DNA of 32,339 bases from Octopus bimaculoides (Eukaryota). The translations under genes and the position numbers were made by a program. Below, piece by piece: positions 1 to 32,270 of the stretch (within the stretch, counting starts at the first letter, position 1; every line of letters starts with the position of its first letter). The stretch spans positions 28,104,423 through 28,136,761 of the forward strand of contig NC_068999.1 in NCBI RefSeq assembly GCF_001194135.2, given 5' to 3'. The notes beneath the pieces were generated by a model. It was given only the letters and a program-made list of their open reading frames with translations. It was not told the DNA's origin and did no database searches.

Positions 1-1510
1 TTCTAGCAGCTACACTTTCAGTGCACCCTCCCCCGCTACTAACTTGGTCACCTAGGTAGTGGAAGCTATCAACTACTTCTAGCTTTTCCCCCTGGAGTGT
101 GGCAAAGGTTGTTTTCTGCACATTTTCAGTGTTTATTGCTCCTGAGCACCTGCCACATACAAAAACTATCTTGCTAGTTAGCCTTCCTTTGATATTGCTG
201 CACCTCTTATGTGTCCATAGCTTACACTGAGTACATCTTATGGAGTTTCTACCTATGCCTTTTCTACAGATCGAGCAGGGCCATCTACCTGAAGGGGTTT
301 GTGTTTTGTCTACCTTCCTACTTATTAGGATTTTGGTTTTAGCTAGGTTGACTCTAAGACCCTTCAATTTTAGTTCTTGCTTTCACACCTGAAACTTCTC
401 CTCTACTTTTGATAGTGACTCAGCAATTAGGGCAAGATCATCAGTATAGAGGAGCTCCCAGGGGCATCCCGTCTTGAATTCCTCTGTTATTGCCTGGAGG
501 ACTATGATAAATAGGAGGGGGCTGAAGACTGAACTTTGGTGGACCCCTACCTCTACCCAGAATTCTTCAGTGTACTCGTTGCCAACCCTCACCTTACTGA
601 CAGCATCCCTGTACATGGCTTGCACAGCTCTCACTAACCACTCATCTATCCCTAGTTTCCTCATTGACCACCAGATAAGGGAGCGGGGGACCCTGTCAAA
701 GGCTTTCTCCATGTCAACGAAAGCCAGGTACAGAGGTTTATCTTTGGCTAGGTATTTCTCCTGCAGCTGTCTTACCAGAAATATAGCATCAGTGGTGCTT
801 TTCCCTGGAACAAACCCAAACTGCATCTCATCTAAACTAACTCTCTCCCTAATTTGTTGGGCTATAACCCTCTCGGTGACCTTCATTACCTGGTCCAACA
901 ACTTGATACCTCTGTAATTGTTTGTGTCTAAAGTGTTCACCTTTACCTTTGTAGCAGTTGACTATGGTGCTGCTACACCAGTCATTGGGTATGACTCCTT
1001 CATGTATCACCTGGTTAACTATACGGGTGACTAGGCTATAGCCGACACTGCCAGATATTTTAAGCATCTCCGCAGTGATTCCTGATGGGCCGGGAGCTTT
1101 CCCTGTCTTCATACTCTTGATCGCTTTATCTACCAAGGTACTGTCAATTAGGATAGCTGGTCCCTCTGTTGGGTCGACATGCGGAAGACTTTCTTCCTCC
1201 TATTCATTCTCTTTATTAAGCAGCCTTTCATAGTGGCTTCTCCAAACCTTTCTCTTTGCAGCCTCGTTTAGTGCAAGTGAACCATCATCCAAGCGGACAC
1301 ATTTCTTTCATACGACATCACGATTCTCTCTCACACACTGTCTTGCAACACGAAATGCTTCAAGTCTTTGGTCCTCGTGGTGCAGAACATTGGCAAATTT
1401 TTTCTGCTTCCCCTCTGGCTAAATCAACCTGTCTCCTAGCTTCCCTTCTGGCAGTCTGATACAATTCCCTGCTACCTCCGTTCTTCCAAGCCTGTTTCTT
1501 TTGTCTAAAC
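1..1510 (-). mobile_element. RTE-clade LINE, 5'-truncated ORF2 (RT) pseudogene that runs off the window start; carries a PHD-like zinc finger after the RT core
   Basis: ORFs 1360-1593, 849-1136 and 383-940 give RTE motifs (GKAPGPSGITAEMLK, NYRGIKLL, QFGFVPGKSTTDAIF, AFVDMEKAFDRV, GVHQ, LLYTDDLALIAES). The same frame continues past a TGA at 383-385 to KGLRVNLAKTK...CSIC...CTQC...HKRC...CGRC...LEVVDSFHYLGD. Frameshifts and stops are present. Confidence 0.95.
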
Positions 1511-7740: not shown

Positions 7741-8306
7741 TCCAAATCTTTGTGATGTAATCATCATAGCAAATTATTATAGTCCAGTATTTACTGATAT
7801 GTTTCACTACTGCTTTCATTGCCACTATTTCTGAGGTAGACAATTGAAACTTTTATCATAAAGGACAACCAGAGTAAGTTTTGAGAAAATCTGCTTTCAT
7901 ATATGACACACAATGATTTTAGTCCAATAAAAATTATAGTGAACCATATTAACAAAATTTTTGTGTAGCATCTAAACTGGTTTGTCTGTTTTGATCTCAA
8001 CCATCTTCACCAGCCCTACTGTCAGTTCATGCTAAAAGTGATTTTCAAATCTCAGTCCCCAAAATTTCTGGATTGCTTACTAAACGTAGAAATAATACAT
8101 TTCTAAATCTCTCAGACAGATTTATGCAGTAGTGATGTGATAAAGTAGTTGTATGCTGTCAACTTAATGTGATAGTCCCATGAAAGGAATAATACTACTG
8201 CTGTTTAGCCTAGGAAGCAGCACCGCTTCCTGTCAGCCTTGACACATTTCCTGTGTTCTTATGTTTACAAGAGGGAGACAAGCACCTCCACTTAGTTAAG
8301 CCTGCA

Positions 8307-8349
8307 TCCAGAGACATGTTTCTGAGTCTTTGCTCGTCATCAGTCTGGA
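8307..8349 (-). ncRNA. Minimal type I hammerhead ribozyme motif
   Basis: Minus strand UCCAGA-CUGAUGA-CGAG caaaga CUCA-GAAA-CAUG-UC-UCUGGA: full core, 6-bp stem I, palindromic ACAUGU stem III; C.A mismatch at the base of stem II. Confidence 0.8.
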
Positions 8350-8557
8350 GTAGCAATGGCCTGCTATTTGGAGATGCCTGTCAAGCTCTTGTAAACATAT
8401 GATAATTCTAGTGAAACACATTCACTGATTTCAAAAATAGAAATAATACATTTCTAAATCTCTCAGTGTGACTTACATGCAGTGAATGTGTTTCACTAGA
8501 ATTATTATATGTTTACGAGAGCTTGACAGGCATCTCCAACTAGCAGGCCATTGCTAC

Positions 8558-8600
8558 TCCAGACTGATGATGAGCAAAGACTCAGAAATATGTCTCTGGA
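8558..8600 (+). ncRNA. Minimal type I hammerhead ribozyme motif
   Basis: UCCAGA-CUGAUGA-UGAG caaaga CUCA-GAAA-UAUG-UC-UCUGGA: perfect 4-bp stem II and 6-bp stem I; predicted cleavage after C8594. Confidence 0.8.
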
Positions 8601-9889
8601 TGCAGGCTTAGCTAAGTGGAAGTGCTTGTCTCCCCCTTGTAAACATAAAGACACAGGAAATGTGTCAAGGCTGACAGGAAGCGGAGCTGCTTCCTAGGGC
8701 TAAATAGCAGTAGTATTATTTTCTTAATGGGACTGTCATATTAAGTTGACAGCATACAGCTACTTTACTAAACGTATATTTCCGTTTATTTTTCTCTCAT
8801 CTTTAATAGCAACAATAAATCTTATATTTTCTTTTGATGTCCAATGCTAATTGTTAATTCTGCTAACTATATAGAAATTTCATTAATTGTTCTCTAACTT
8901 CACTTTCTTAATCTAAGGTCTTCAACAATATATAGATATTTTTGCTACTGATGGTAGTTGGATGCTTAAATTTTGATACTACATTATAATTTTTAACAAC
9001 CCACATTGTTTCAGATGAAAAATAGTTACACATAGCAGTAATACATGGATGGTGATAACTGATCCAAGGAACCAGTGGGATAACTATTCAAACCATTCCT
9101 ACAAATATATGAATTTGAAAACAGTATACAAATGAATATAGCATGTCAAGATGTTAAAGATATGAAAAAAATTGTGACAAATTTTTATTCAAAGAAAGCA
9201 AATCAAGATAATATAGGTGAAAAATACAGTGAACACTATATAATCCAAATTTTACTTTTAAAATAACATTTTTATTTTAACAGTTAAATTTATTGTTTCT
9301 CAAAATTGAAAACAAGAACCACTGAATTTTTTTTTTTCTAGAATGAGTTTATTGGGTTTTTACAATCACTTAACCATTATTGTTTTATTGTCAATTTTTA
9401 ATAGTCATTTCAATTGCTTCAGGACTTTAATTTGTTTAGTTAGGAAGTTTAATCTCTGGAAGTATATTACAGGATGTAATAATGTCAATTTTATCTTGGA
9501 TACGGAACAAGTCATTAGTCAGGAGACGCATATTGTGTGATACATCCTTCAAAAGAAATAAATAAAATAATATATAAAGACAAATGATAAGTACATGGAA
9601 CTTACATTATTATAACCTTGAATGAAAAAGCTTCAGAGTACAATCAGCAAAATTCAAATCCTCTAATCCAGAGGATTAGTAAAATGAAAACTGACAAGAC
9701 TTTGTACATTATCTGCTGAACATTTGTAAACACAACTTGAGCAAACCATAATGTTACATAGGAGGCACTAAATTTTAACCGTCTCATTTCTCTTTCAGAC
9801 ATATCAACAGTGTCAACATGATAGATTCCAATCCAACTGTAAATGAAAGAGCATGTCATGCTGCTGATTCTAGCTGCCAATTATGGTGA

Positions 9890-16789: not shown

Positions 16790-16863
16790 TGAAGTTATCT
16801 CTTTTGCCAAACAGCTAAGTTACAGGGATATAAGCACACCAAGTTATCAAGACATATACATAT

Positions 16864-16925
<62 letters not shown>

Positions 16926-17105: not shown

Positions 17106-18119
17106 ATGAATACATTCTGAAAACATAATACATAAAAAAAAGAAATATCGTCTGGAATACATTTCCCACATACTTCTCCCACTGACCAGCAGATTCATAA
17201 AACCTAATCAAATTTGATGATTCCCAAGACATTCCCAATGAAGTTCCTTTTGTATTGCTAGTGATTGTTTAAATACTTACATGTGTTTGATCACGAACTA
17301 AACCTGTATATCATTTCAGTTTATGATCTTAGACAATACACCAATTTGAGACTGAAAAGAGATACTCTCTCATTGATGGAATGTGAACCATGAATGTGTC
17401 ACTACTTGCCAGGTAAATATATTACCAATTACACTACAAAATATTTGCCATTTCATTTTCTTTAATTTGCTTTTGTTATTCCAGTTGTATAATGTTATCT
17501 TCACAAGATCATTTGTTTGTTACTTAGTGCTATCAGGAAGCTATTCTACTTATATCCAACACAGTAAGATGCCCTGTTTCTATTCACTGTTTGTGGTGAG
17601 AAAGAGGCCCATGAATCAAATTATAAATTAACTGTGATTTTAATGTAAATGATTTTTGTAAGTACCAACAAAAACAAAAAAAAGAAACAGGCCTACTGAA
17701 GAGATTGAAAAAAAAGTTTGGTAAATATACATGTCATGGCAAACAACTCTCAATTTTCTTCTTAAAGATAATGTATGCATACATCCTGAACATCACATGC
17801 CTAATCTACAAATTAGTTTGCTATTACTTTTGCTGTGTTGATACATACTTTACTCTAAGTTTTTTACTTATTCAATGAGCATTGTGATATAGTATAGATC
17901 AGTTTGATTTATTGCATATATAATGATTCACTGTAAGTCAACTAGCTAGATCATTTGAACTGAAATGGGCTAAATTAGCTAAATGTCAGTGATAACATGC
18001 AATGTCGGATGAAGAAACAAACACACAAAGAGTATCTAGTTACAATGAGAATATGAATTACAAAAAGAAATATATAACAGAAAGAAACAAAATAGAGGAT
18101 TTCTGAAATTCGAGGGGAC

Positions 18120-18680
18120 AAAGTGATGAAGCATGATTTCCAAATGTTGGGCCTCACGGAGGCAATGACAAGTGACTGAGACTTTGGTGATATGCTGTGC
18201 TTGAGAAGACCTGTCAAGCCAAGTGAGATCATAGTCATGACTGATGCCAGTGTTGCTTAACTGGTGCATAAAAACAAAACACCCTTCGAACGTTGGGTGA
18301 TATGTTGTGCTCGAGATGACCTGTCAAGCCAAGTGAAATCATAGTCATGGCTGATGTTGGTGGCATATATAAAACACCCTTTAAACGTTTAGCCTCACGG
18401 AGGCAGTGACAGGTGACCGAAACCTTTAGCGATATACCATGCTTGAGAAGACCTGTCAAGTGAGGTTGTAGCCGATGCCAGTGTCACTTAACTGGCACCC
18501 ATGCTGGTGGCATGTAAAAAGCACCCACTACACTCTTGGAGTGGTTGATGTTAGGAAGGGCATCCAGCTGTAGAAACCATGCCAAATCAGATTGGAACCT
18601 TGCACATCTCCCTGGCTTACCAGTTCTATCCAACTCATACCAGCATGGAAAATGGATGTTAAATGATGATGATGATGATG
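18120..18680 (+). mobile_element. RTE-type 3' tail with internally repeated modules and (GAT)n end
   Basis: Three copies of gcttgagaagacctgtcaag-like sequence; ttaggaagggcatccagctgtagaaac; ccagcatggaaa...gatgatgatg. Similar to 23100-23680. Confidence 0.75.
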
Positions 18681-19069
18681 AACTGAGATTGCCTTAAAAG
18701 GACAAATACTGTAAATAGTAATTATTGGACAACTGTTCAAAGTTGACAGTTTATAATTTGTCACTTGTATTATACTGATTTTATAACCAAGATAATGGTT
18801 CATACCACCTAACTGTAATCAGGTACATTAAAGTAGATTAGCTCACTGTAAAAAGCTGTGGCAGCAATGTAAATTTGTGATACTATGCTCATGGAATTGT
18901 TAACAATATACCTATATTTTGCTTTTATTGCAAATCCAGAGTGAATTTATAAATAAATAACTTAGAATAGTTTGAGTTAAAATAGAAACTTTTGAAGGAT
19001 TTGGATAGTAAAAAGAAGTTTCACTGAAAAATTAATTGTTTAATGCCTGCTTTCCATGCTGGCATTAAA

Positions 19070-19282
19070 CGACGATCACTAATATTGGTTTCAAATTTTG
19101 GCACAAGGCCAGAAATTTTGGGGGAAGAGGTATATCAATTACATCAACCTCAGTGTTCAACTGGTACTTATTTTATCGACCTTGAAAGGATGAAAGGCAA
19201 AGTTGACCTTGGTGGAATTTCAACTCAAAATGTAAAAACGGATGAAATGCTGCTAAACATTTTGTCTGCCAGCTTGCCACCT
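19070..19282 (+). mobile_element. SINE (second family)
   Basis: caactggtacttattttatcgacc..gaaaggatgaaaggcaaagttgacc is shared with 31600-31805. Confidence 0.75.
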
Positions 19283-19366
19283 TAATGATTACTTATAATG
19301 ATTACTTATAATGATTACTTATAATGATTACTTATAATGATTACTTATAATGATTACTTATAATGA
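19283..19366. repeat. Perfect 13-bp minisatellite (TAATGATTACTTA) x6.5
   Basis: Read directly; abuts the SINE 3' end. Confidence 0.97.
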
Positions 19367-19667
19367 AATGAATTCAAGTTTAATATATAACATTTTTTTT
19401 TTGTTGTTACAAGGCTAACAAATCTAAATAGCTTCAGAAAATTGCTCTTAAAATTGCAGTATTAATATAGTCTAAACAAAATCACTTTCTAATATGCAAT
19501 GCACATTAAAAAAATAAAAACCAACAAATCTAGTTCATAATAAATAATAAGTCAATGAAAGGTTAGAAAAATAATTCACATAGCCAATTTTCAAGATTAT
19601 ACATGCGAAACCTCTTGATACTTTTTTCATTAATATGATGTAGCAATAATAAAAGAAATTTACTCAC

Positions 19668-19764
19668 GAGTTATATTTTGGTTGGAGAATTTGACCTTGT
19701 TGATGGAAAGCAGAAAAAGTATTGCCTGAACTTGCATTATCACTGCTGGGAATGGCTTTGTCTA
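19668..19764 (-). CDS. Gene C internal exon (97 nt): (I)DKAIPSSDNASSGNTFSAFHQQGQILQPKYN(S)
   Basis: aattgtttacag| ... |gtgagt; only one frame is open, phase 1 to phase 2. Confidence 0.75.
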
Positions 19765-19961
19765 CTGTAAACAATTAAGTTGAATATAGGAAAGGTTAGA
19801 TGCTATCACAATTAACAAAAAAGTTATTTTAAATATTTGAAAATTATTGACAATGATACTACTTTTGAAAGCTATATTATGATATTTAATGATTTCTAAA
19901 TTAGTATGGCACAGGATTTATCTTACTTAAATTTTTACAATATGTAGCAAGTTATCATGTA

Positions 19962-20530
19962 TTGAGTTGGAACAAAAGTTCATACGGTTTTTCAACTAGT
20001 GATATTTAAACATGTGATTTAATTTCTCCTGTGCCAGAATAATATGACATATTTTCTGAAAGGTGACATTTCAACACATCTTTCTGTATGATTACTGTGT
20101 GGTTAGTTTATTTCTACTGCTTTTACATTTAAAAAATGTAAATGGAGGAAAATGAAATACATTTTCATCATTTGATGCTCTTTTGTTTCCAGAAAGAAAA
20201 AAAAAGTTGTATAAATAGTAAAAGAGAGGGTGTCACAGCTGAGAGTACTATTTGTAAGTGGTTTGCTAGGTATAGGAGTGAAAATTGTGATCTGGAGAAC
20301 TGTGAACATTCTGGCAGGATTACAGTTGTTGATAAAGACCTAACTGAAACACTAATCAAAAATAATCCAAGTTATATGACATAAAACACCACAAGATATT
20401 CCACGTATCTAATATGAACATTATAAGACATTTAAAAAAAGTTGGACACATGAAACACTATGCTGTCTGAGTGTCTCATAATTGAATGGAAAAAAGTTTA
20501 ATGAACCACATTTCCATCCATGGCTCAAAT
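19962..20530 (+). mobile_element. Degraded mariner 5' fragment
   Basis: TIR-like TTGAGTTGGAACAAAAGTT after TA; ORF 20142-20384 MEENEIHFHHLMLF...ESTICKWFARYRS..DLE...HSGR is a mariner HTH region. Confidence 0.8.
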
Positions 20531-20553
20531 GCAACAAAAACAACCAGTTTTAA

Positions 20554-21433
20554 AGTATCATGTTTAGTGGAGTAATTTGAAGTACATAGTGTGAAGGCAG
20601 TTGTATCTATCCTGCTTTGTGAAATCTGTACATCCAACATATAGAAGGACACAATAGTGGTGACAAGGATATCCACTTATAAAAGTGGAATAAGTCTATC
20701 CACTTTATTCGAAGCTTAAGTTGGACATCAACATTTTCTTTTGATACAAAATAATAAAAAAATAGCTAACATGGAAGACTTATTAGCCTCTGTGGTGCAG
20801 TGCAACAGTAACATTAGAAAGAGTCAAACAACAGTAGCCAAGAGTCGAATAACAGTACTCAAAAGCTGAACAACAGTACCCAAGAGTCGAACAACAGCTA
20901 AAAACATTGAAACCAGCTAAAAAATAGATATATGGAAAAAAGAAAAAAGATACCCATAGAAGTGCTCTACAACACCTTTGATGTTCCAATGCCACAAGAA
21001 GTCGAACTTAGGCATAGCAGCACAAGAAAGAGGAAACAAACAGAATGGTTGGAAGTAGTGCCTAGACGGAAGAAATATTAGACTTCACTAGGAAGAAAAT
21101 TTTAAAAAGGGAGATATGGTGAAAGAAAATAATAATAATAATATTAACTTATAACAGAAGTCAATCTCAAAGGGGGGGGGGATGTTGTGGCGAGAGTCAT
21201 TGACATCCCTGTGAAATTGGAAGAATGGACTAGCTGAACTCTTATGAAAAGTAGCATGTTAGTTGAGATGAGAGAGAAATTGTAGGAGTTGTTGAGAGTT
21301 TGTGGAAGTTGTTGAGATTGTTAAGAGTTTGTATTTATTGGAGTATCATGTTTAGTGGAGTAAAGTGCATTGTGTGAACACAGTTATGTTTATCCCTGCT
21401 TTGTGAAATCTGTATATCCAACATATAGAAGGA
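20554..21433. repeat. Two ~92-bp degenerate direct repeats (20554-20649, 21342-21433) flanking a segment with a 21-bp tandem repeat (20827-20899)
   Basis: agtatcatgtttagtggagtaa...ctgctttgtgaaatctgta.atccaacatatagaagga occurs twice; aacaacagtacccaagagtcg x~3.5. Confidence 0.8.
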
Positions 21434-21452
21434 TATAGAAGGTAATTATTAA

Positions 21453-21672
21453 ACCTTTAGCATTCAGATTATTCTGTTAAATGTAATGCTTATTTATTCA
21501 CATTGTTTTGAATTACTCATGAATTATCTCATAACTTTGAGATATTGATGATGTGACTGTATATTATTAGACTGACACTGAAGGTTAGGCATGAGAGACT
21601 AGATCTAGCTGGTTTGAATATAAAACAGGTACAGTATTTTGGCTTGATATAGCTGGTTTAAATGCTAAAGGG
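21453..21672. mobile_element. piggyBac-type MITE
   Basis: TTAA flanks (21449-52, 21673-76) and TIR (A/C)CCTTTAGCATT; a related right end lies at about 6310-6368. Confidence 0.75.
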
Positions 21673-21868
21673 TTAATGACCTATCATTCATAGTAAGAAT
21701 GGCAGGTCGATTGTTGGTGGCATGAGAGGGATTTGTCTGCAGGATAACTGGAAATAGGTATTAGTTGCATAACATATCCTTAGTGCTTACTTGTTTGGAA
21801 AGGTAATCTTTCATATTATATGGGTAACACACAGAATATTAATTTGCATATAAAAAGCAATTAATTAC

Positions 21869-21977
21869 TTCTTAATGTTGGCATAGAATGGTTCAGTTCA
21901 CTGGTATTAATTTCTTCATCTGATTCTGAAGCCTCTCCAGCAACTACAATCCCTTGAAGGTTTGGTAACTTTGATCC
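21869..21977 (-). CDS. Gene C most 5' exon found (109 nt): GSKLPNLQGIVVAGEASESDEEINTSELNHSMPTLR
   Basis: ttatgttttttcattaag| ... GAA|gtaatt; phase 0 to phase 1, compatible with 19668-19764. Upstream exons not found. Confidence 0.6.
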
Positions 21978-22229
21978 CTTAATGAAAAAACATAAAATAT
22001 TGAAAAGGGTATTGTTAGAAGACATGAACTATTGACAAATATATATGAAAAGTGCAACAGTTTTTAAAATAGTAGAATTGACAAAATGGGAGGTGAGGAA
22101 GTGTTTAATGATAATACGTAAGTAGTCAGATATGAGTCATCTAAGTGACCACTTACACAGCTTCTGTAAAACCAAACTGGGGACATACTCTCCTATGAAA
22201 CTCACCAGTTGTCCTTTACACTTCAGAAA

Positions 22230-22400
22230 TTTGGTCAAAGCAATATCATTGCAGTTGACATCATCTAAGTCTTTGATTATGTCTCACACAAGGCTCTTCC
22301 AGCTCAGCTAGCTACTTAAAGTTTCATCCCTCTATTTTCTTGGATTTGAATCTTCCTGTCAGAATTTTACCATTACAGCTTGCACTATAGGTCCTGTTCC
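22230..22400 (+). pseudogene. Degraded CR1/Jockey-like RT fragment
   Basis: Remnants of ..D.SK.FD.VSH..L..L....WI.SFLS. Confidence 0.45.
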
Positions 22401-22559
22401 ATGTGAAGACAAGATATAGGTAAAACTTCCATACAGTACATTCTGGATAGACTACAGACACATAAAAATGCAGTAGAATCACAGGATGATTAACAGTAGA
22501 AGTGCAGGAGCAATAAATAATAAGAGCACACGGGAAATAGATGTTCTGAAATGTCCAGG

Positions 22560-23680
22560 AAGCTTAGAAGTAATAGTTTCTGTTATCTAGGTGACATAAT
22601 TAGCAGTGGAGGCAGATGTCCTGAAAGTATAGTTACTAGAATATGAATTGGTTGGTGAAATTTCAGAGAACTTTTACATTTGTTTGTAACAAAACGCTTC
22701 TCTCTCAGAATGAAAGGCAAATTGTATGATGCCTGTGTCTGAACAGCAATCCTACATGGCTGTGAAACTTGGATTGCAAATGCAGAGGACATGCAAAAAC
22801 TTGAAAGAAATGGAACGAGTATGCTCCAGTGGAAGTCCAATGTCAGTGTACTTGTACAACAAAGCACATTTGCTTAGAGAAAAATTGGGGCATAAAAGGT
22901 AGCAGATGTAGTGTGCAGGAGAGAAGACTGCACTGGTATGTCATGTAATGCAGATGCATTGAGGACAGCTGTATAAATAAGTGCTGATCATAAACATGGA
23001 AGAAATATATGGAAGAGGTAGACCTAGGAAGACTTGAGATGAAGTGGTGAAAACTGACCTCAAGATGTTGAGCCTCTCAGAGGAGACAATGGGGGACCAA
23101 GATGAATGGCATTATGCAGTGCTTGAGAAGACTCATCCAGCTCAGGAGAATTGAAGCTCTGTCTAGCTTTCCCCAACAACTTATCTTGACACCTACTCTT
23201 CCATCAATCTTCTTTGTTACCCTATTTTCTTCACTTCCCCCTACACTTAACTAATATCCTCTATGTCCAATTTATTCCCTATCTCTAATCATCTGTCATA
23301 CTATTTTCACTCAGTGCACTTACTTACCTACACATTTGCTTTTCTGCTCTGCTATCCTATTCTGTCACATGTTCATATTGCACCAGGACCTCATATCTCT
23401 TTAGTAAGACACCTGCTCCTCTCTCTCTATCATAGTTTTTAAAATTTTTCCTGTCTATATCCTACTCAGTTGAAGGGTCTTACTTCACAGGTACTTGGTG
23501 ACCTCATCTGTGCTGATGCCACATAAAAAGCATGTTATACTGTCTGTTAAGTGGTTGGCATTAGGAAGAGCATTCAAAAGAAGACAAAGAACATTGCTGA
23601 GCCATCTAGCTCATCTGTTCTTGTCAAACTGTCCAACCCATGCCAGCATGGAAAAAAAGAATGTAAAATGATGAGGATAT
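22560..23680 (+). mobile_element. RTE LINE 3' portion with 3' UTR
   Basis: GDIISSGG...ESIV.RI.IGW.KFREL...KGKLYDACV.TAILHGCETW, GRGRPRKT, atgatg tail. Confidence 0.85.
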
Positions 23681-23829
23681 AAACACACACACAACCCTGT
23701 GTCACTGTAACAACTAGACTATTAAATGTTGTAATACACTGCCAGTCACAATGCACTTCCAATTCTATCTTGATTGTGCTATTCTTTTTCATCTTTCCCA
23801 AATTGTTGAATTAAATCATCTTCCCATTG

Positions 23830-25610
23830 TTGTGGAGGCCTTCTAAGTGGCCTTTTCCAATCCCTTGGACACCACTCTGGCACAGCTGAATTTGTGCTTT
23901 TGACATTCTGCAGTTATGTCATTCAATCCACTCCATTCTCATTAAGGATATGCTCTCACAATGGTATTCCTAGCACAGATCTTTCTATGGCCCTTTGTGT
24001 TATAGCCAATTGATGTTCTTCCCTCATCATAGTAGCCCACGTCTCGCTTGCATATCAGGGAACAGGTAGGACAGTGCTGCTGAAGTGTTTGGCACATGTG
24101 GTCTTGTCCAGCTATGCTTTGAGCACATGCTTTATTGAGGTAAACACCTTCCATACTGCCCTTACTTTCTTTCAGATTTCAGAGTTCATGTCATAACACA
24201 TGACATATATTTACTGTGAGCCCTAAGTGGATGTATTCCTTTACTTCCTCAATAACATCACTTCCCATCTCAAGTCAGCCTTATTCTACATTTTTGGACT
24301 ACATGTATTTTGTTTTAATATGGTTCATTTTAAGACCTACTACTGAGCTATGTGTGTCCAGCTCTGTCAGCATGGTCTGCAGCTGATCTGTGGTTTCAGT
24401 ACTGATTACAATGCCATCTACGAATAGAAGACGTGTTAGTAACTTGCTACTGATATTCATGCCATATGTCCATTCAATGTTTCTGATGACTATTTCTAGA
24501 TATGCAGTGAAGAGCTTTGGAAAGAGATTCCATCTCCTTGTTGATACCCTTCCCACTTGGAACTCTTGCTGGCAGCAATAGTAGAGCTATATCTGTTGTG
24601 CATCCAGAGTTTGCATCCCTGAGTAGTTTGGTGTATTGCACTCACACACCTTGAATTTCCAGAGATTTCAGCACTGAATTCATCTCAATGTTATTGTAGG
24701 TCATTTTGTAGTCAATGTAAACAACACACAGATGTAGCCAGTATTCTTTTGTTCTTTCTATAAGCTGTGTTAGAGTGAACATGTAAATAAGTAGCTTATA
24801 GAGATGAGACAAGAGACATATAGTTCAATAGTTTCTTAAATCTTCTTTATCACCATTTTTATGGAGGGAGATGGTATTTGACTCTTTCCACAGAAAAAAT
24901 ATATTTACCCTCCTTCAGACAGTGATTGAAGTACAGAAGGATGTTCTATAGCTCGTCACTTCCACACCTAAACATCTCTACTGTTATGCCAGCTTTTCCT
25001 GGAGCATTATCTGCTTTCATCAACTTGATGTATTTTCAATTTCACTGACTAGAATAGGTGGCACGTCTTTCAACATTAGAGGATTGAGCTTCACTGATGA
25101 TTTAAAAAGGTTGGTGTCAAAGGTTTTGCATGCTGCTTCTATTTCACCTTTGTCTGTCACCATGAGCCCATCCTTGTTCTAAAGTGCCATCACCTCTGAC
25201 CAATAGAATGCCAGCTTTTTCCTGCATCTTTTTAGACTTTCTTTTCTTCTGTAGCCTGCATCAGCTTCTTCAAGCTATTACTCTCAAAATCATTTTCTAC
25301 ATGCTGTCTGATCACTTTGCAAAGAACAGAATACATGAAGGGATCTTTCATGTTTCTTTTATGGTTTTATGTTTCTCAAGCATTCTCTTTGTCTCCTCCA
25401 AGATTTTATTGCCAGGCTCCCACCAGTTTGCAGAGCTCACTTTCGACATGCTGCTTTAAATTTTCTGAACCAGCCTTCATCAATCAGTTCATGTTGACTC
25501 CAAACCTGCCTCTTGATAGCATCCTGAAACTGTACCACACTGAGGAACTTAACATACTGATTCTTCATTGAGATATGCAGAGCCTTCTCTCTGATTTTGT
25601 TGATCACAAT
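23830..25610 (-). mobile_element. Degraded RTE LINE of a second family (ORF2 fragments)
   Basis: ORF 24299-24556 (PKLFTAYLE...LLFVDGIV...VGLKMNHIKTKYM); upstream K.PGKAGI remnant. Confidence 0.8.
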
Positions 25611-25619
25611 CTTTGCCCA

Positions 25620-25634
25620 TATATACATATAAAC

Positions 25635-25685
<51 letters not shown>
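25620..25685. repeat. (TA)n microsatellite
   Basis: Read directly from the sequence. Confidence 0.95.
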
Positions 25686-25686
<1 letters not shown>

Positions 25687-25899
25687 TCAGCTGGCAAAAA
25701 TGAGTAGTGCCTGTATTTCAAAGTGTCAGCCTTGTTAAATTCTGTGTCACACTGGATCTCCCTGAGAGCTACATTATGGGCTTGTCAATGGAATGCTCAG
25801 TCACTTGGACATTAATTTCATGAGCAAGCTGCTCCATTGATCGGATCAACTGGAACCCTCATTATCAAAACCAACAGAGTGCCAGGAGGAGGATATATA

Positions 25900-27187
25900 T
25901 CAGGTCATTAAGAATGAAATATCCAATTTTGAACTGAAAGTTTTTATTTTACTTTATCTCAACAAAAAGCAATGCAGTTAATCAAAGTATGCACCTAAAT
26001 TATCAACACAATTCTGCCATTTTATCAGTAGCTTATTTATGGCGGCAGTGAAGAATTCTGGAGAACAAGAGGTGATGAAATCACGAAAGGCTGTTTTTGC
26101 ATCTTCTTCAGATTTGAAGTATTTTCCTTGCAAAAAGTTGTCTAATGCCTGGAAAACATGATAGTTAGTTGATGCATGGTCTGGGAAATATGGTAGATGA
26201 CAGAGTACTTCCAAGTTCAGTTCCTGTAACTTGAGTAGCATTCTTTGTGCAACATGTGGCCAAGCATTGTCATGCAAGAGAATTGGCCTGTCTTTATTGA
26301 CCAATCTCAGTTGTTTAATTGCAAGTTCACTCACCATTTCATCCAATTGGTTGATGTATACATCTGCTGTAATTGACTTACCAGGTCTCATGAAGCTGTA
26401 ATGGATGACACCAACGCTGGACCACCAAACAAACACCATTAACTTTTATTGATGAATATTCTTTTTTGGGATTGTGTTTTGGCACTTCGTCTCTATCCAA
26501 CCACCATGCAGAACGCTTACTATTGTTGAAAAGAATCCATTTTCCATCACATGTAACATTATGATGCAAAAATTGTTTGCTTTTATGCTGTGACAGCAAA
26601 GAACAGCAAGTTTGAAGACGATGTGTCATTTGATGCTCTTTCAGTTCGTATGGTACCCACTTGTCCAGCTTCTTTACCTTACTGATTTGTTTCAGATTGT
26701 CCAATACAGTTGGAATTGAAACATCAAACCTTGCTGCTTACTCATACGTAGTTTGAGACGTATCTGTCTTCACTACAGTTTCCAGCTCATTATTATCCAC
26801 CTTGGTCTCAGGTCTACAATGGGGCTGATTTTCAAGAGTAAAGTTATCAGATTGGAACTTCTCAAACCATCGACATACAGTCCACTCATTCACCACATCT
26901 TCACCAAACACCTCATTGATGTTTCAAGCTGTCTGGGATGCATTGGTTCCATGACAGAACTCATATTCATAAACAACACAAATTTTCTATCTATCCATGA
27001 GTTCACAAAAATTGATCTACAAGAGAAAACTCACAATATAATCAGACACCATGAACTGCATTTTGAAAAGTGATGATGTAACTCTTCAATGCTGTAAAAC
27101 AAAGAATTGTCAGGATAAAATATTAGAGGTAATGACTGTCAAACCTGGTACATAAGAAAATTAGACATTTCATTCTTAATAACCTGA
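25900..27187 (-). mobile_element. Full-length mariner (DD34D-type) element with a disrupted transposase (about 25978-26998)
   Basis: TIRs TCAGGT(C/T)ATTAAGAATGAAAT with TA flanks. ORFs 26378-26704 and 25978-26439 give WVPYEL, VTCDGKWI, HDNAWPH and YFPDHASTNYHVF (third Asp appears mutated to Asn). Confidence 0.95.
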
Positions 27188-27195
27188 TATATATA

Positions 27196-28514
27196 CAGGG
27201 TGTCCATAAAGTTTCTTTACCATTTAAAAAAAAATATTACAAAGGCAATTGATAAGATTTTATTTTCAGATTTATTCTATTGTATTCAGTGTGCATTTGT
27301 GTGTTTCAGGGATCCTGTTGGTGAAAGAGGTGCTGTTGAATGAACCCCTAAAAAATGGCTACCCCTCAAGAGAAGGCGCAATGTGTCTCATGGTTTATTG
27401 AAACAAAATCGGATAGGCAGACTCAGCGAAACTACAGAACTAAGTATGGAAAAGATCCACAATCACATCCGTCAATTCGTGCATGGCACAAGAAATTTAT
27501 GGAGACAGGGACAGTGTTAGATAAAGGGACGAGTGGGCGACCAAGAACATCTAATGAAAACATTGATCGTGTAAGACAATCCTTTTCTCATTCTCCCATA
27601 AAGTCCATCCATACTGCTGCCACACAGTTAGAGCTACCGCGTTCAACAGTGCACAAGATCCTACACAAGAACTTGCGATTGTACGCTTACAAAGTGCAAC
27701 TCTTACAGGCACTCGAGCCAAATGATAAACCAAGACGAAAAGGGTTTGCAGTTAACATGCTGGAACGAATTTCTGAGGATGAAACATTCCTCAGACAAGT
27801 TTGTTTTAGTGATGAGGAAACCTTTCATGTTTCAGGGAAACTGAATAAGCACAATGTGAGAATCTGGGGATCAGAACACCCCCATGTGACTAGAGAAATT
27901 GAGCGTAAAAGCCCAAAGGTAAATGTGTGGTGTGGGATCATGTGCAATCGAATAATTGGTCCATTTTTCTTCAATGAGACATCAATTACTGCAAACGTTT
28001 ACCTTGACCTTTTATCTGAATATGTGGCACCATAACTGAATAACCTTCAACCAACCATCATTTTCCAGCAAGATGGAGCACCACCACATTGGGGACTGCA
28101 TGTTCGTGGGTTCCTCAATCAAACATTTCCAGACTGGTGGATTGGAAGGGATGGTCCAATTCCTTGGCCGCCACGTTCACCAGATATCACTCCCCTGGAC
28201 TTCTTTCTATGGGGCTATGTTAAATATTTCGTGTATCGAACAAAGATACGGGACATTACTGACCTAAAGCAAAAGATTACTGATGCCATTGCCACAATTG
28301 ATGAGGCTATGTTACAGCAAACATAGCAAGAAATCGAGTACCGTCTTGATGTGCTTCATGCAACTAATGGTGCCCATGTAGAAGTGTATTAAATGAGGTA
28401 AAAAAAAAACTTTAATAAACACTGAATACAATAGAACAAATCTGAATAAAATATCTTATCAATTGCATTTGTAATAAAGTTTTGAAATGGTAAAGATACT
28501 TTATGGACACCCTG
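27196..28514 (+). mobile_element. Full-length DD41D (rosa/Visitor-type) Tc1/mariner element
   Basis: TIRs CAGGGTGTCCATAAAGT with TA flanks; 345-codon transposase frame 27355-28392. Confidence 0.95.
27355..28392 (+). pseudogene. DD41D transposase with two in-frame stops and no frameshift
   Basis: FSDEETF...QQDGAPPH...RSPDITPLDFFLWG, with 41 residues between the 2nd and 3rd Asp; TAA 28033-35 and TAG 28324-26. Confidence 0.92.
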
Positions 28515-28590
28515 TACTTCTTTTTGTATTGCAAGATTCTTGATGTGAATTCATGTTATTGGCATAATGATCCTCCCAAGACACAAGATA

Positions 28591-29805
28591 CACTGAACTG
28601 AAAAAGAAACTCAAGATGTGTGTGACTGTGAAATATGTTTTAAATTCATTATGTCAAAGATAAATTTTGATAAATCTGATAAAGTCAATTTCTTGGATGC
28701 ATTTTGACCACAATCTATGAGTCATTGTCATGTGTTTTGGTAGTGGGTGGATCCAGCACATCAAGATTGTAGGGCATGACATGTTCAATACCATATATGC
28801 CCTCCCTGGGTGTTCAAAACGTCCATATATCATTGGTACAAGGAGTGCATGAGGTGGTTCACAAAAGTCATTGGTACCTGCGCCCACACTCTGAAGAAAG
28901 CTGCCTTCAGTTCCACATGAGTTGTTGGCTTTCGGACCATCTGGTTCAGCCATCTCTGGATTTCATTCCACAGGTGTTCAATTGGGTTCAAATCTGGCCA
29001 CAGTATGGTTCTGATGTTGTGCTGACACAAGAAGTATATGGTGACCATGGCCAAGTGGGAGGGAGCATTGTCCTGCTGGAACACGTGGCTATGGTGATGT
29101 GCGAAGGGCACGATGTGAGGTCTTAAGATCTGGTCAACATAGCGCTGTGCTGTGATGCTATTCCTTCTGCCTGTACCAACATTTTGAAACACATGGGGCC
29201 CAATTCTCTGACTCAAGCCTATAGCACCCCAAATCATGATGCTTTGGCCACCCCACGCATCTCTCTCCATGACACATGCATCTCTGTAGCGTTCACCCCT
29301 CTTATGCCACAACCTCACTCTGCCATCCAAGGTGGAAACACAGTACCGGCTCTTGTCAGAGAAGACTATTGACCTCCATTGTTGATCCCGCCAATGTCGG
29401 TGCTGTGTAGCTCACTGTAGTTGTTGCTGACAGTGGCTACCCTGCTTGCAATTGGCTGATAGCTTGCTCTCTCTGTGCTGCTGACAATCGAGTCATACCT
29501 GATGCATCCAAATTATGAATGATAGGAACACAGTTCAAGTTGATTTTTATACGCATAACCTTCATGAGATGCACATGTATTTCAGTTTCCATGACAATTG
29601 TTTGCGACTGCCACCCACGGCATTGAACGCAGCTGCAGTTTGGTATCTCATTTCAGGAAAAGTTGAAAGGTTACCTGCAATTTGGGTCTCAGCCATAAAC
29701 CAGCATGTCTTGGAATATTTACACTTACATCTACGAAATAAATTTTCAGAATTTACCATATAAAAATAACATTTGAAAAAATCACGTTTCTTTTGCGGTT
29801 CAGTG
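28591..29805 (-). mobile_element. Tc1 (DD34E-type) element with a disrupted transposase
   Basis: TIRs CACTGAAC(C/T)G(C/A)AAAAGAAAC with TA flanks; ORF 28830-29330 has MIWGAI, FQQDNAPSH and PDLNPIEHLW. Confidence 0.92.
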
Positions 29806-30179
29806 TATATATTATTATTATATATATATACATACACACACACAGATATTAAGGTTTGTTTTTATATCAAGTTATTATAAGAACAATTTTACATCAAGCT
29901 GAAGTGTTACTCAATACCTTTTGCAAAATACACATTCATTATCCTTTAACAAGTAAAATATTGACAGTGACTTCAAAGTTTCACCCTACTAAGCTATCAT
30001 TGAACTGTGGCACAGCTGAGTTCATCTTGGCTTTATATAATTTCTGCTAAATTAAAATTTTCTGAGGTAGATGGAACTCTGTTGAATAATAATTAGATTG
30101 TACGGTAAGTTGTGATGGAAGATTTTTATTAAGTTTGGAGTTGTTTTATTGTTTACAATTCAATCCTGCATATAGAACT

Positions 30180-31390
30180 TTGTAACCAGGTATGTCTTTT
30201 TAGAGGTGCTGACATCATACTTGTACATGGCTGTACAACTTTCAGGAAGGTGTCATAACTTCCACAAGCCATTCATCTACCCCTAGCTTCCTCACTCTCA
30301 GCATATCACAAAGCAAGGGACACTGTCAAAGGATTTCTCCAGGTCAAAGAATGCCAAGTTCAATGGTTTGCTCTTAGCAATATACTTCTGCAGATGTTTG
30401 ACTAAGAAGCTAGCATCAGTAGTATTTCTCCACAGCACAAATCCAAGTTGTATCTCATCTAGTCTAATTCTGTTTTAAATTAATTGGGTTATAAGGCTCT
30501 CTGCAAATTTCATGACCTGGTCCAGCAATTTGATATCTCTGTAATCACTTCTATCTAAGGCATCTCCTTTAACCTTGTAGCAGCTGAATATAATGATGTT
30601 ACACCAGTCATTGGGAATGACACCTTCCTGAATAAGCAGACTAACTATAGGGTAACCAGACTGTATCCTACTCTGCCAGATATTTGAAGCATCTCAGCAG
30701 TAAATCCTGATGGACCAGGGGCTTTCCTTCATATCCTTAGTTGCCTTATCTATCATACTGCTCTCAACTAGGGTAGCTGGTCCCCTTGCTGGGTTCACAT
30801 TATGAAGACTCCCTTTCTTCCATGCATCCTCCACATTTAATAACCTTTCATGGTAGGACTTCCTCATCTCTTTCTTTTCAGAGTCACTACATGCAAGCAT
30901 ACCATTATCCATCCATACATACCCACAACTTCCATACATACCCTCAACATCTTGACTCTGTCTAGCAATTCAGAACACCTCTCATCTCTGATGATCATGC
31001 TGTAAGACATTGATAAACCTCTTCTTTTCTGCTTCTGCTCTTGATAGATAAACATGTCACCTAGCTTCCTTTTAGTTACCTGATATGATTCTTGGCCACC
31101 TCCATTTTTCCATTCTTTCCAAACCTGTCTCTTCTTTTTTATAGACCTATTTACCTCACTGTTTAACCACTATGTCACCCTTAATCTGAGAGAAGCTTCT
31201 TTGCTTCAGCCACAGATTTGGGCTGTTGCCTTTAGTAGGTCATCCCATAAAAGATTTCAGTTGTCCTCAATGTTATACATCTCTATCTCTTCCTCCTTCT
31301 GGCCAACTGCTCCAATTAGAACATCTCTAAATCATTGGCTATTTAAAAGATCCTTAAGCTTCCACACACACGCACACACACTCTGATCAA
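30180..31390 (-). mobile_element. Degraded RTE LINE ORF2 fragment, same family as 1-1510
   Basis: Homologous blocks ccagtcattggg.atgac.ccttc, tttgaagcatctc.gcagt, catctcatcta; ORF 30694-30939. Confidence 0.85.
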
Positions 31391-31599
31391 TTTGATAGGG
31401 ATTTATTGAATAGATTGAGGTAGATCAAAAGTGAAGTACACCATATATGGTGGTTAGACAGAATGACACAAATCAACAGATAAAACAATCCATTCAGGCT
31501 GCGAAGGAGGTATAAGTGAAGGGAAGTTTACTGATATTTGGCATTCCACAACTCCAGGAGTATCGAAAGTTAAATGGAACTTTAAGCATGGCATAATAT

Positions 31600-31805
31600 A
31601 ATCTTTTCTACTATAGGCACAAGATCTGAAGTTTGTGAGGAGGGGTATAGTCGATTTAACCCAGTACTCAACTGGTACTTATTTTATCAACCCTGAAAGT
31701 ATGAAAGACAAAGTTAACCTCAGTGGAACTTGAACTCAGATGGACAAAATGTTGCTAAGTGTTTTGCCTAGCTGTCTAATGATTCTATCAGCTTATCACC
31801 TTATC
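31600..31805 (+). mobile_element. SINE (same family as 19070-19282)
   Basis: Shared caactggtacttattttatc...gaaag.atgaaag.caaagtt.acc...gaact. Confidence 0.7.
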
Positions 31806-32149: not shown

Positions 32150-32270
32150 TGAATCCCAGCACTTATTTTTCTAGCCTGGTACTTATTCTATGGGTCTCTT
32201 TTGCCAAAAAGCTCAGTTACTGAGATGTAAACACACCAACACTGGTTGTCAAGCATTGGTGGGGAACAAA

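What the first reader, a model, noticed from the sequence alone, without database searches (positions are those of the whole stretch)
8141..8767. Foldback element with two divergently oriented minimal hammerhead ribozymes (Penelope-like/retrozyme)
Seen: two ~287-bp inverted arms at ~93% identity with a 52-bp loop. Each arm holds a complete hammerhead core: CUGAUGA, stem II YGAG/CUCA, GAAA, a 4-nt stem III insert, UC cleavage site, and 6-bp stem I UCCAGA/UCUGGA. One is on + (8558-8600), one on - (8307-8349). Established: minimal type I hammerheads with a short palindromic stem III (ACAUGU here) occur in Penelope-like element pLTRs and metazoan retrozymes and often cleave as dimers. Inference: this is a non-autonomous, ribozyme-bearing retroelement with no ORF, invisible to the ORF track. 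Either strand's transcript carries one ribozyme plus its antisense copy, so co-transcriptional cleavage would compete with folding into a 287-bp hairpin. It may lie in the intron of the plus-strand gene B candidate.
Basis: partly seen in the sequence, partly recalled or inferred. Interest (0 to 1): 0.9.

Follow-up and report, generated by a model that had tools for sequence, protein, structure and literature searches.

The report
Inverted pair of hammerhead-ribozyme retroelement copies
This is a decayed, non-coding jumping-gene insertion in the octopus genome: two head-to-head copies of a ~350-nt unit that each carry a self-cleaving hammerhead RNA motif, a known kind of element (animal retrozyme / Penelope-like dependent), so real but fairly ordinary.

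Summary
The arms 8141-8427 and 8480-8767 are 93.1% identical inverted repeats around a 52-nt loop. Each carries a complete type I hammerhead (HHR) core, on + at 8558-8600 and on - at 8349-8307. The motif is rare by chance: about 0.001 per shuffled window.

The window is Octopus bimaculoides chromosome CM046619.1.

The HHR has the canonical metazoan architecture found in non-LTR retrozymes: helix I 6 bp, helix II 4 bp, and helix III 1 bp with a palindromic tetraloop.

- a 12-bp target-site duplication (8077-8088 and 8765-8776);
- a one-sided 52-nt "tail" (8089-8140) that repeats the loop;
- an 11-bp palindrome at the head-to-head junction.

Together these match the published insertion signature of Penelope-like elements (PLEs).

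No reverse transcriptase (RT) or GIY-YIG ORF lies nearby.

Rfam gives no hit at threshold; the best is HH9 at 17.5 bits. The minus copy has a C·A mismatch at the base of helix II.

No other copies could be retrieved, so family-level conservation and covariation remain untested.

At this locus the two ribozymes are antisense to each other, so a read-through transcript folds into a 287-bp hairpin rather than a ribozyme dimer. The locus is most likely a dead insertion.

Verdict: a new member of a known kind, of modest interest.

The parts
8077..8088 (.). Left copy of the 12-bp direct repeat TTACTAAACGTA (putative target-site duplication)
   Evidence: Exact 12-mer shared with 8765-8776. P of about 0.0016 for a shared 12-mer or longer between shuffled 100-nt flanks.
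8089..8140 (-). 'Tail' (X1/T1): a 52-nt extension beyond the 3' end of the minus-sense copy. It is a direct repeat of loop plus start of right arm (8438-8490).
   Evidence: 29 nt identical (8087-8115 = 8438-8466), then a diverged stretch with indels. It is present at one end of the insert only, like the PLE tail (PMC3846280, PMC8557442, PMC11167929).
8141..8427 (-). Left arm: element copy with its sense strand (HHR strand) on the minus strand, 3' end at 8141
   Evidence: 93.1% identical to the right arm. Folds on its own at -98.3 kcal/mol, z -5.2.
8307..8349 (-). Type I hammerhead motif, minus strand. Helix I 6 bp; helix II 3 bp plus a C·A mismatch; helix III 1 bp plus CAUG loop. Cleavage predicted between 8313 and 8312.
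   Evidence: Sequence. No Rfam HHR hit even in a 71-nt search. The HHR-competent fold is 2.8 kcal/mol above the MFE of the isolated 142-nt rod.
8417..8427 (.). Left half of the 11-bp palindrome (CACATTCACTG) that closes the loop at the head-to-head junction
   Evidence: Complement of 8480-8490. Palindromes and overlaps at inverted pLTR junctions are described in PMC3846280.
8428..8479 (.). 52-nt loop. Read on the minus strand it is the upstream copy of the tail (T2) plus a 10-nt linker. It contains the 19-nt palindrome TAGAAATAATACATTTCTA.
8480..8767 (+). Right arm: element copy with its sense strand on plus, 3' end at 8767 abutting the TSD, with no tail
   Evidence: Folds on its own at -100.8 kcal/mol, z -5.5.
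8558..8600 (+). Type I hammerhead motif, plus strand. Helix I 6 bp; helix II 4 bp (U10.1-A11.1); loop 2 CAAAGA; helix III 1 bp plus UAUG loop. Cleavage predicted between 8594 and 8595.
   Evidence: Sub-threshold Rfam HH9 match at 17.5 bits, sharing the UAC internal loop and the outer GGCC helix. The HHR-competent fold is 1.2 kcal/mol above the MFE.
8507..8648 (+). Intra-arm imperfect hairpin (about 142 nt) with the HHR at its tip. The mirror-image region in the left arm is 8260-8401.
   Evidence: Inverted repeats I3 and I4. nhmmer self-match of arm positions 27-170. Folds.
8765..8776 (.). Right copy of the 12-bp direct repeat TTACTAAACGTA. Its first 3 nt overlap the arm end.

Best explanation
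The locus is one old insertion of a non-autonomous, non-coding retroelement of the animal 'non-LTR retrozyme' kind in the Octopus bimaculoides genome.

The element. Its unit is about 350 nt and folds into a rod. At the tip of the rod sits a canonical metazoan type I hammerhead ribozyme.

Family-level function (established for other animals, inferred here). Multimeric transcripts are cut by pairs of hammerheads acting as dimers. The monomers are circularised. A reverse transcriptase from an autonomous Penelope-like element (PLE) then copies them back into DNA.

Anatomy of this locus (shown):
- A minus-sense copy: tail repeat, linker, body, tail, running 8490->8089.
- A plus-sense, 5'-truncated copy: body only, 8480->8767.
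- The two copies lie head to head and overlap over an 11-bp palindrome.
- The 3' ends of both copies abut a 12-bp target-site duplication.

Origin (inferred). This is what a PLE-type integration gives. Either both nicked target strands prime reverse transcription and the two cDNAs anneal at the 11-nt complementary ends, or the first cDNA snaps back on that palindrome and copies itself. The two alternative RT start sites would explain why only one end has a tail.

Current state (inferred). The locus is a decayed relic.
- The arms have diverged by 7%, mostly through transitions.
- The two ribozymes are antisense to one another, so no tandem sense pair exists to form the active dimer or release a unit.
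- A read-through transcript would fold into a 287-bp double-stranded hairpin.
For: Inverted arms and identity.

Complete HHR cores on both strands, far above chance.

Architecture matches the published 'canonical' metazoan HHR (PMC4209133) and the axolotl/newt retrozyme HHR (PMC7229834):
- helix I 6 bp, helix II 4 bp, helix III 1 bp with a palindromic tetraloop;
- a UAC internal loop and a 6-nt A-rich loop 2, as in the Rfam HH9 consensus.

The inferred unit of about 350 nt falls within the retrozyme size range of 170-400 nt, close to mussel (350-390) and axolotl (330-350). It folds at -110 kcal/mol, z about -7, as a circle. The HHR-competent fold lies within 1.2-2.8 kcal/mol of the MFE of the isolated rod.

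Other retrozyme features: GC 40% and no ORF with a Pfam hit within about 3 kb.

Insertion scars:
- 12-bp TSD, P about 0.0016.
- One-sided tail and 11-bp junction palindrome.
- These match PLE hallmarks: an inverted 5'-truncated copy adjacent to the 5' end, a 30-40-bp tail at one end, TSDs of 8-10 bp, and a 15-bp overlap or palindromes at the inverted junction.
- PLE protein cleaves and extends both strands and starts RT at two sites that define the tail.

Genomic and literature context:
- Penelope elements are abundant in octopus genomes.
- Retrozymes are proposed to be PLE pLTR derivatives.
- Pairs of HHRs 100-700 bp apart on opposite strands were already noted in Schistosoma.
Against: No Rfam hammerhead family reaches threshold.

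The 10.1-11.1 pair is U-A in one copy and C·A in the other, not the near-universal G-C. The C sits in a CpG, so the mismatch may be the ancestral state. Activity could therefore be low or nil.

Only two copies, the two arms, were available:
- HHR divergence (2 changes in 43 nt) is no lower than elsewhere in the arms.
- The structure-preservation test is not significant (P = 0.12 and 0.20).

No tandem sense repeat exists at this locus, although that is the operational definition of an active retrozyme.

The two tail copies are only about 79% alike outside a 29-nt identical core. That is more diverged than expected if both came from one template in one event.

No autonomous PLE is present in the window, and no homology to a PLE pLTR could be tested.
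Confidence: 0.75

Rival explanations
1. Two separate insertion events. A plus-oriented monomer (8089-8140 plus 8491-8767) was later hit, within its own tail/5' region, by a second copy of the same family in the opposite orientation (about 8141-8490). PLE endonuclease is known to recognise the element's own tail sequence.
For: - The 7% divergence between arms and the roughly 21% divergence between the two tail copies are easier to explain with different source copies.
- The inserted block 8141-8490 is exactly one 350-nt unit.
- Penelope EN needs the tail sequence for recognition and cleavage of Penelope-containing targets.
Against: - The second insertion has no TSD of its own. If 8087-8140 and 8438-8490 are taken as its TSD, it would be 53 nt long and poorly conserved.
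- The host copy and the nested copy would have the loop segment in opposite orientations relative to the body, so the two copies would not share one unit structure.
- A head-to-head pair joined at a palindrome is the standard single-event PLE outcome.
Confidence: 0.15
2. A single monomer inserted, and the inverted duplicate arose later by a host DNA replication or repair error (fold-back inversion at the 11-bp palindrome), unrelated to the retrotransposition machinery.
For: - The 11-bp palindrome with a 52-nt spacer at the centre is the kind of short inverted repeat that seeds fold-back duplications.
- The arms would have started identical, which is compatible with the transition-dominated 7% decay.
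Against: - The outer ends of both arms coincide exactly with the element's 3' end, and the right arm ends precisely at the TSD. A host fold-back event would not be expected to do this.
- The architecture is a recurrent property of PLE insertions.
Confidence: 0.06
3. A foldback or MITE-type DNA transposon (or a hairpin-RNA gene such as a miRNA/endo-siRNA precursor) in which the hammerhead-like strings are coincidental.
For: - Long, near-perfect terminal inverted arms and an extremely stable hairpin.
- Sub-threshold Rfam matches to long plant miRNA precursor models.
- No Rfam hammerhead hit at threshold.
Against: - The arms are not directly flanked by a duplication. The 12-bp repeat lies 52 nt outside the left arm but directly abuts the right arm.
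- A 12-bp TSD is atypical for MITE superfamilies (own knowledge).
- The miRNA hits are far below gathering (91 against 211 bits), belong to plant families and merely reflect the hairpin.
- An HHR of this quality is expected 0.001 times per window. It also carries peripheral features of canonical type I HHRs that the descriptor did not ask for: the UAC bulge, loop 2, the outer helix and a palindromic loop 3.
Confidence: 0.04

Closest known systems
Metazoan non-LTR retrozymes (Cervera & de la Pena 2020, PMC7229834): coral, mussel and axolotl/newt satellite-2 repeats
   Same: - Non-coding, with GC below 50%.
- Unit of about 350 nt, predicted to be highly self-paired.
- Canonical type I HHR with a 6-bp helix I, a 4-bp helix II, and a 1-bp helix III capped by a palindromic tetraloop (as in the axolotl HHR_Amex1 and newt HHRs, which need dimers to cleave).
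- TSD longer than 4 bp.
   Different: - This locus is not a direct tandem array. It is a head-to-head inverted pair with only a 53-nt partial tandem, so it fails the 'two consecutive units with HHR' criterion for an active retrozyme (bioRxiv 10.64898/2026.07.22.740005).
- The 10.1-11.1 pair is U-A or C·A instead of G-C.
- circRNA expression is unknown.
- I found no report for cephalopods in the searchable library.
Penelope-like element (PLE) insertions: pLTRs with an inverted 5'-truncated copy, a tail and a variable TSD (PMC3846280, PMC8557442, PMC11167929)
   Same: - Head-to-head inverted copies joined at a palindrome or overlap.
- An extension ('tail') present at the 3' end of only one of the inverted copies.
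- A TSD of about 10 bp.
- An HHR inside the repeated unit.
   Different: - No RT/GIY-YIG ORF, so the element is non-autonomous.
[quoted passage not shown]
- The tail is 52 nt (29 nt strictly conserved), against the usual 30-40 bp.
- Homology to an octopus PLE pLTR was not tested.
Rfam Hammerhead_HH9 (RF02275; amniote intronic HHR) and the Schistosoma Sm-alpha HHR
   Same: - CUGAUGA...GAAA core, 6-bp helix I and a 6-nt A-rich loop 2 (CAAAGA against the consensus CAAAAA).
- A UAC internal loop 5' of helix I and an outer GGCC/GGC helix.
- The comparison with the Schistosoma HHR rests on my own recollection of its sequence.
   Different: - Scores only 17.5 bits against a gathering score of 52.
- Helix III is reduced to 1 bp.
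- The closing pair of helix II is not G-C.
- It is not a conserved single-copy intronic element but part of a transposon.

Membership tests
Hammerhead ribozyme, type I (canonical metazoan form) | Conserved core C3 U4 G5 A6 N7 G8 A9 / G12 A13 A14 / A15.1-U16.1 / H17 | tested here: met
   Both copies have CUGAUGA, GAAA and U-C before helix I, in the correct order and spacing.
Hammerhead ribozyme, type I (canonical metazoan form) | Helix I about 6 bp (open end); helix II about 4 bp with a loop; helix III 1-2 bp with a 2-4-nt palindromic loop (PMC4209133) | tested here: met
   - Helix I: UCCAGA/UCUGGA, 6 bp.
- Helix II: UGAG/CUCA, 4 bp, in the plus copy; 3 bp plus a C·A mismatch in the minus copy.
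- Helix III: A-U plus CAUG (minus copy) or UAUG (plus copy).
Hammerhead ribozyme, type I (canonical metazoan form) | G10.1-C11.1 base pair, highly conserved in natural HHRs (PMC4209133) | tested here: not met
   U-A in the plus copy and C·A in the minus copy. A mismatch at this position has a precedent in the axolotl HHR_Amex2.
Hammerhead ribozyme, type I (canonical metazoan form) | Score at or above the Rfam gathering threshold for a hammerhead family | tested here: not met
   No hit at gathering. HH9 scores 17.5 bits against 52 for the plus copy only.
Hammerhead ribozyme, type I (canonical metazoan form) | Core conservation and helix covariation among homologous copies | tested here: inconclusive
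   Only the two arms were available. There is one apparent compensatory pair (27/170), but the structure-preservation test gives P = 0.12 and 0.20. No other copies were found.
Hammerhead ribozyme, type I (canonical metazoan form) | Site-specific self-cleavage | not testable with these tools
   Needs in vitro transcription of monomer and tandem-dimer constructs.
Non-LTR retrozyme | Short direct tandem repeats (150-450 bp) with two or more consecutive units each carrying an HHR in the same orientation | tested here: not met
   The two HHRs are on opposite strands. The only direct redundancy is the 53-nt tail repeat. By the preprint's terms the locus would be monomer derivatives, not an active retrozyme.
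Non-LTR retrozyme | Non-coding; GC below 50%; no LTR, PBS or PPT; TSD longer than 4 bp; self-paired unit of 170-400 nt | tested here: met
   - GC 40%.
- Only ORFs of 49 aa or less, and none of the nearby ORFs of 70 aa or more scanned reaches its Pfam cut-off (one weak sub-threshold match).
- 12-bp TSD.
- 350-nt unit folding at -110 kcal/mol.
Non-LTR retrozyme | Expression as circular RNA | not testable with these tools
   No transcriptome data accessible.
PLE-mobilised insertion (pLTR-type architecture) | Inverted 5'-truncated copy adjacent to the 5' end (head to head), with a palindrome or overlap at the junction | tested here: met
   The 5' ends of the two sense strands meet at 8427/8480, with an 11-bp palindrome. 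Compare PMC3846280 and PMC8557442.
PLE-mobilised insertion (pLTR-type architecture) | Optional 30-40-bp tail at one end only; TSD of variable length | tested here: met
   A tail at 8089-8140 on the left only: 52 nt in all, of which 27 (8089-8115) fall in the 29-nt stretch 8087-8115 identical to the internal copy. 12-bp TSD.
PLE-mobilised insertion (pLTR-type architecture) | Sequence homology of the unit to the pLTR of an autonomous PLE in the same genome | not testable with these tools
   No DNA search of the octopus genome is available. There is no PLE ORF in the window.
PLE min-HHR (Cervera & de la Pena 2014) | Helix II 7-8 bp, helix I 4-5 bp, no or vestigial helix III, and an unpaired nucleotide between A9 and G10.1 | tested here: not met
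   Helix II is 4 bp and helix I is 6 bp. The nucleotide after A9 pairs with the A before G12 in the plus copy.
MITE / foldback DNA transposon | Terminal inverted repeats immediately flanked by a fixed-length TSD | tested here: not met
   There is no duplication directly flanking 8141 and 8767. The 12-bp repeat is asymmetric relative to the arms.

The most novel reading that the evidence does not exclude
The locus may be direct structural evidence for how animal retrozymes move. It carries a canonical retrozyme-type hammerhead, yet it bears the full integration scar of Penelope-like elements:
- head-to-head copies joined at an 11-bp palindrome;
- a one-sided tail defined by two RT start sites;
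- a 12-bp TSD.

A second reading also remains open. Such inverted retrozyme pairs could act as hairpin dsRNA sources, feeding small-RNA silencing of the family or serving as ADAR substrates in a heavily RNA-editing animal.
Probability: 0.25. Interest if true: 0.5.

Novelty: new member of a known kind. Interest (0 to 1): 0.3.

Why it matters
Animal retrozymes are abundant circular-RNA-producing elements, and their mobilising enzyme has only been inferred. Reviews noted that their sequences show no motif pointing to a partner (PMC7761336). A 2026 preprint argues from phylogeny that they derive from PLE pLTRs.

If the arrangement seen here recurs across the octopus genome, it would add independent, mechanistic support for that link. 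It would also extend retrozymes to cephalopods.

On its own, the locus is one decayed transposon copy that standard ORF-based and Rfam-based annotation would miss.

Tried and rejected
Rfam searches:
- At gathering threshold over the whole window: nothing.
- In E-value mode over 8000-8900: only hairpin-driven, sub-threshold plant miRNA models.
- On 71-nt slices: HH9 at 17.5 bits for the plus copy, nothing for the minus copy.

Search for further copies:
- blastn and nhmmer in the window and in two extra loci, L009 and L010: none.
- Metagenome scan with the HHR core plus loop 2 pattern: 7 stretches. The four I read lacked the rest of the motif, and none of the fetched loci matched the extended pattern.
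- Viral contigs: 0.
- Indirect retrieval through spurious ORFs of the element: exact look-ups not on record. Protein searches with the longest open frame and with a concatenate of all open frames returned nothing.
- Sampling related genomic DNA through homologues of the neighbouring mariner-like ORF gave one 20-kb locus without the element. I abandoned this route as too thin.

Other tests:
- Pfam on ORFs of 70 aa or more within about 3 kb of the element: no RT or GIY-YIG.
- Test for structure-preserving substitutions between the arms: not significant.
- In-place inversion of one unit of a direct dimer: rejected, because the first 11 nt of the body are present twice.

Failed calls:
- pattern syntax error.
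- literature query timed out.
- scan server gave no answer.
Full report
SOURCE. An exact look-up of a 226-aa ORF in the window (27355-28035) places the window on Octopus bimaculoides chromosome CM046619.1 of assembly GCA_001194135.2. The accession is tied to O. bimaculoides in PMC8967140. The window is 31-42% GC. It is full of transposon debris: LINE RT fragments, and mariner/Tc1-type transposase ORFs. Penelope elements are among the abundant repeat families of octopus genomes.

OBSERVATION. The foldback is real.
- Arms 8141-8427 and 8480-8767 align over 288 columns with 268 matches (93.1%) and one 1-nt indel. Of the 19 substitutions, 16 are transitions.
- The loop is 8428-8479, 52 nt.
- The plus-strand RNA of the right arm reads UCCAGA-CUGAUGA-UGAG-CAAAGA-CUCA-GAAA-UAUG-UC-UCUGGA (8558-8600).
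- The minus-strand RNA of the left arm (8349->8307) is the same except for C instead of U after CUGAUGA, and CAUG instead of UAUG.
- A descriptor requiring the core, helix II, U-H and helix I finds 0.016 hits per dinucleotide-shuffled window. It finds 0.001 hits at the observed quality: helix I at least 6 bp, helix II at least 4 bp, and a short helix III.

WHAT KIND OF HAMMERHEAD. Cervera & de la Pena (PMC4209133) define two kinds.
- The 'canonical' metazoan type I HHR has helix I of 6 bp, helix II of 4 bp, interacting loops, and helix III of 1-2 bp capped by a 2-4-nt palindromic loop. It needs a second copy to form an active dimer.

The octopus motif is of the first kind. The same architecture, a single-base-pair helix III with a palindromic tetraloop, characterises the newt and axolotl retrozyme HHRs, which cleave poorly as monomers and well as dimers (PMC7229834).

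Rfam does not recognise the motif at threshold. On a 71-nt slice, however, the plus copy aligns to HH9 at 17.5 bits (gathering score 52). The alignment shows shared peripheral features that my descriptor did not demand:
- the UAC internal loop immediately 5' of a 6-bp helix I;
- a 6-nt A-rich loop 2;
- an outer GGCC/GGC helix.

The minus copy gets no hit.

One weakness is the pair closing helix II. It is U-A in the plus copy and C·A in the minus copy, not the usual G-C. The C lies in a CpG, so C·A may even be the older state. A mismatch at this position does occur in the weakly active axolotl HHR_Amex2.

1. Each arm contains its own imperfect hairpin of about 142 nt with the HHR at the tip (I3 and I4). 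Isolated arms fold at about -100 kcal/mol with z about -5.4. A secondary structure compatible with the HHR is only 1.2 kcal/mol (plus copy) or 2.8 kcal/mol (minus copy) above the MFE of that rod.
2. An exact 12-mer, TTACTAAACGTA, occurs at 8077-8088 and 8765-8776. The probability of such a match between shuffled 100-nt flanks is about 0.0016.
3. Between the left 12-mer and the left arm lie 52 nt (8089-8140) that directly repeat 8438-8490, that is, the loop plus the first 11 nt of the right arm. Of these, 29 nt are identical and the remainder is diverged with indels.
4. The loop is closed by an 11-bp palindrome: CACATTCACTG at 8417-8427 and CAGTGAATGTG at 8480-8490.

Read on the minus strand, the locus is therefore tail-repeat (8490->8438), linker (8437->8428), body (8427->8141) and tail (8140->8089). 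That is one unit of about 350 nt plus a 53-nt terminal redundancy. The plus strand carries the body only (8480->8767). The 3' ends of both copies abut the 12-bp duplication, and the 5' ends overlap by 11 nt.

COMPARISON WITH KNOWN INSERTION SIGNATURES. This is the published signature of PLE insertions.
[quoted passage not shown] - Purified PLE protein cleaves and extends both target strands. It starts reverse transcription at two nearby internal sites, and the interval between them is the tail (PMC11167929).

A MITE reading fails because no duplication directly flanks the arms. None of the nearby ORFs of 70 aa or more that I scanned reaches its Pfam cut-off. The one weak match, to an Integrator subunit 7 domain, is below threshold, and there is no RT or GIY-YIG match. 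The element is therefore non-autonomous.

MECHANISM (INFERRED). The family behaves like a non-LTR retrozyme.
- Multimeric transcripts are cut by dimerising HHRs.
- The monomers are circularised.
- A PLE reverse transcriptase then copies them (PMC7229834, PMC7761336).
- A hypothetical 350-nt circular monomer assembled from the minus copy folds at -110 kcal/mol, with 64% of bases paired and z about -7.

For this insertion I favour a single event. In one version, cDNAs primed from both nicks anneal through their complementary 11-nt 3' ends. In the other, the first cDNA snaps back on the palindrome and copies itself. The tail reflects the downstream RT start site being used on one side only.

The main difficulty for a single event is that the two tail copies differ much more, outside the 29-nt core, than the arms do. 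This keeps a two-event, self-targeted nested insertion alive as a rival.

At this locus the element is probably inert.
- There is no tandem sense pair of HHRs, which retrozyme processing needs.
- Any read-through transcript folds into a 287-bp duplex at -523 kcal/mol.
- Divergent transcription from the loop would instead give two sense monomers. There is no evidence for or against this.

WHAT COULD NOT BE SHOWN.
- All indirect routes failed.
- Between the two arms the HHR is no better conserved than the rest: 2 changes in 43 nt against 19 in 288, none of them in an invariant core position.
- One apparent compensatory pair (27/170, C-G to U-A) is not significant against random placement of the same substitutions (P = 0.12 and 0.20).
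- The pattern is compatible with neutral, CpG-biased decay.
- Gene context is only partly known. A minus-strand gene whose product has a BLOC1S3 domain spans at least window positions 17355 to the end. Whether it or a plus-strand gene covers 8.1-8.8 kb is unknown.

NOVELTY. HHR retrozymes are described in cnidarians, a mussel, amphibians and 'many other invertebrate genomes'. Pairs of HHRs on opposite strands 100-700 bp apart were noted in Schistosoma. A PLE origin of retrozymes has been proposed and supported phylogenetically. I found no paper in the searchable library linking hammerhead ribozymes to O. bimaculoides or retrozymes to cephalopods, which is not proof that none exists. The finding is therefore a new member of a known kind. 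Its one modestly interesting aspect is that a canonical, retrozyme-type HHR element carries a complete PLE-type integration scar.

Noticed in passing
window 17355-32339 and beyond (L001, L009): The assembly's annotation has a minus-strand gene whose 193-residue product hits Pfam BLOC1S3. It spans the whole 20.7-kb locus fetched, so it has very long introns full of transposons. Its exons were not located.
   Followed up: partly
window 25978-29411: A cluster of DNA-transposon remnants:
- Transposase_1 (mariner) ORFs at 25978-26737 (-).
- A DUF4817 helix-turn-helix ORF at 27355-28035 (+). It is annotated as a gene in the assembly and continues in another frame at 28036-28323.
- A DDE_3 (Tc1-like) ORF at 28833-29411 (-).
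   Followed up: partly
window 2-1199 (-) and 30478-31169 (-): Two LINE fragments. The first has an RVT_1 reverse-transcriptase domain. Both share the peptide motif EGVIPNDWC. They are not PLE-type, having no GIY-YIG.
   Followed up: partly
protein P0006: A 345-aa homologue (72% identical) of the octopus DUF4817/transposase ORF is labelled in NCBI as coming from Salmonella enterica. It sits on a 1.5-kb contig and is most likely animal-DNA contamination of a bacterial assembly.
   Followed up: no
L010 (ENA ERZ25067582, contig ctg12343_32x_l, 2.2 Mb): A long contig from an ENA assembly carries a copy of the same mariner-like element at 84% nucleotide identity. The fetched 20.6-kb locus (L010) is 32.7% GC. 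The organism was not identified, and the contig may be host DNA in a metagenome.
   Followed up: no
window 18142-18533: Degenerate repeats spaced 110-240 bp apart (3 copies of a 64-nt block at 64-91% identity, plus two further two-copy families). Tandem Repeats Finder did not report them. They overlap several short minus-strand ORFs with repeated peptide motifs.
   Followed up: partly
window 19283-19366: A perfect 13-bp minisatellite (TAATGATTACTTA x 6.5). AT and TC dinucleotide arrays lie at 16854-16923, 25619-25685 and 32281-32315.
   Followed up: no
window 8329-8578: Rfam E-value-mode hits to plant miRNA precursor families (MIR8562 at 91 bits against a gathering score of 211, MIR7993, MIR1435 and others) on both strands. 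These are artefacts of the long hairpin, not miRNA genes.
   Followed up: yes
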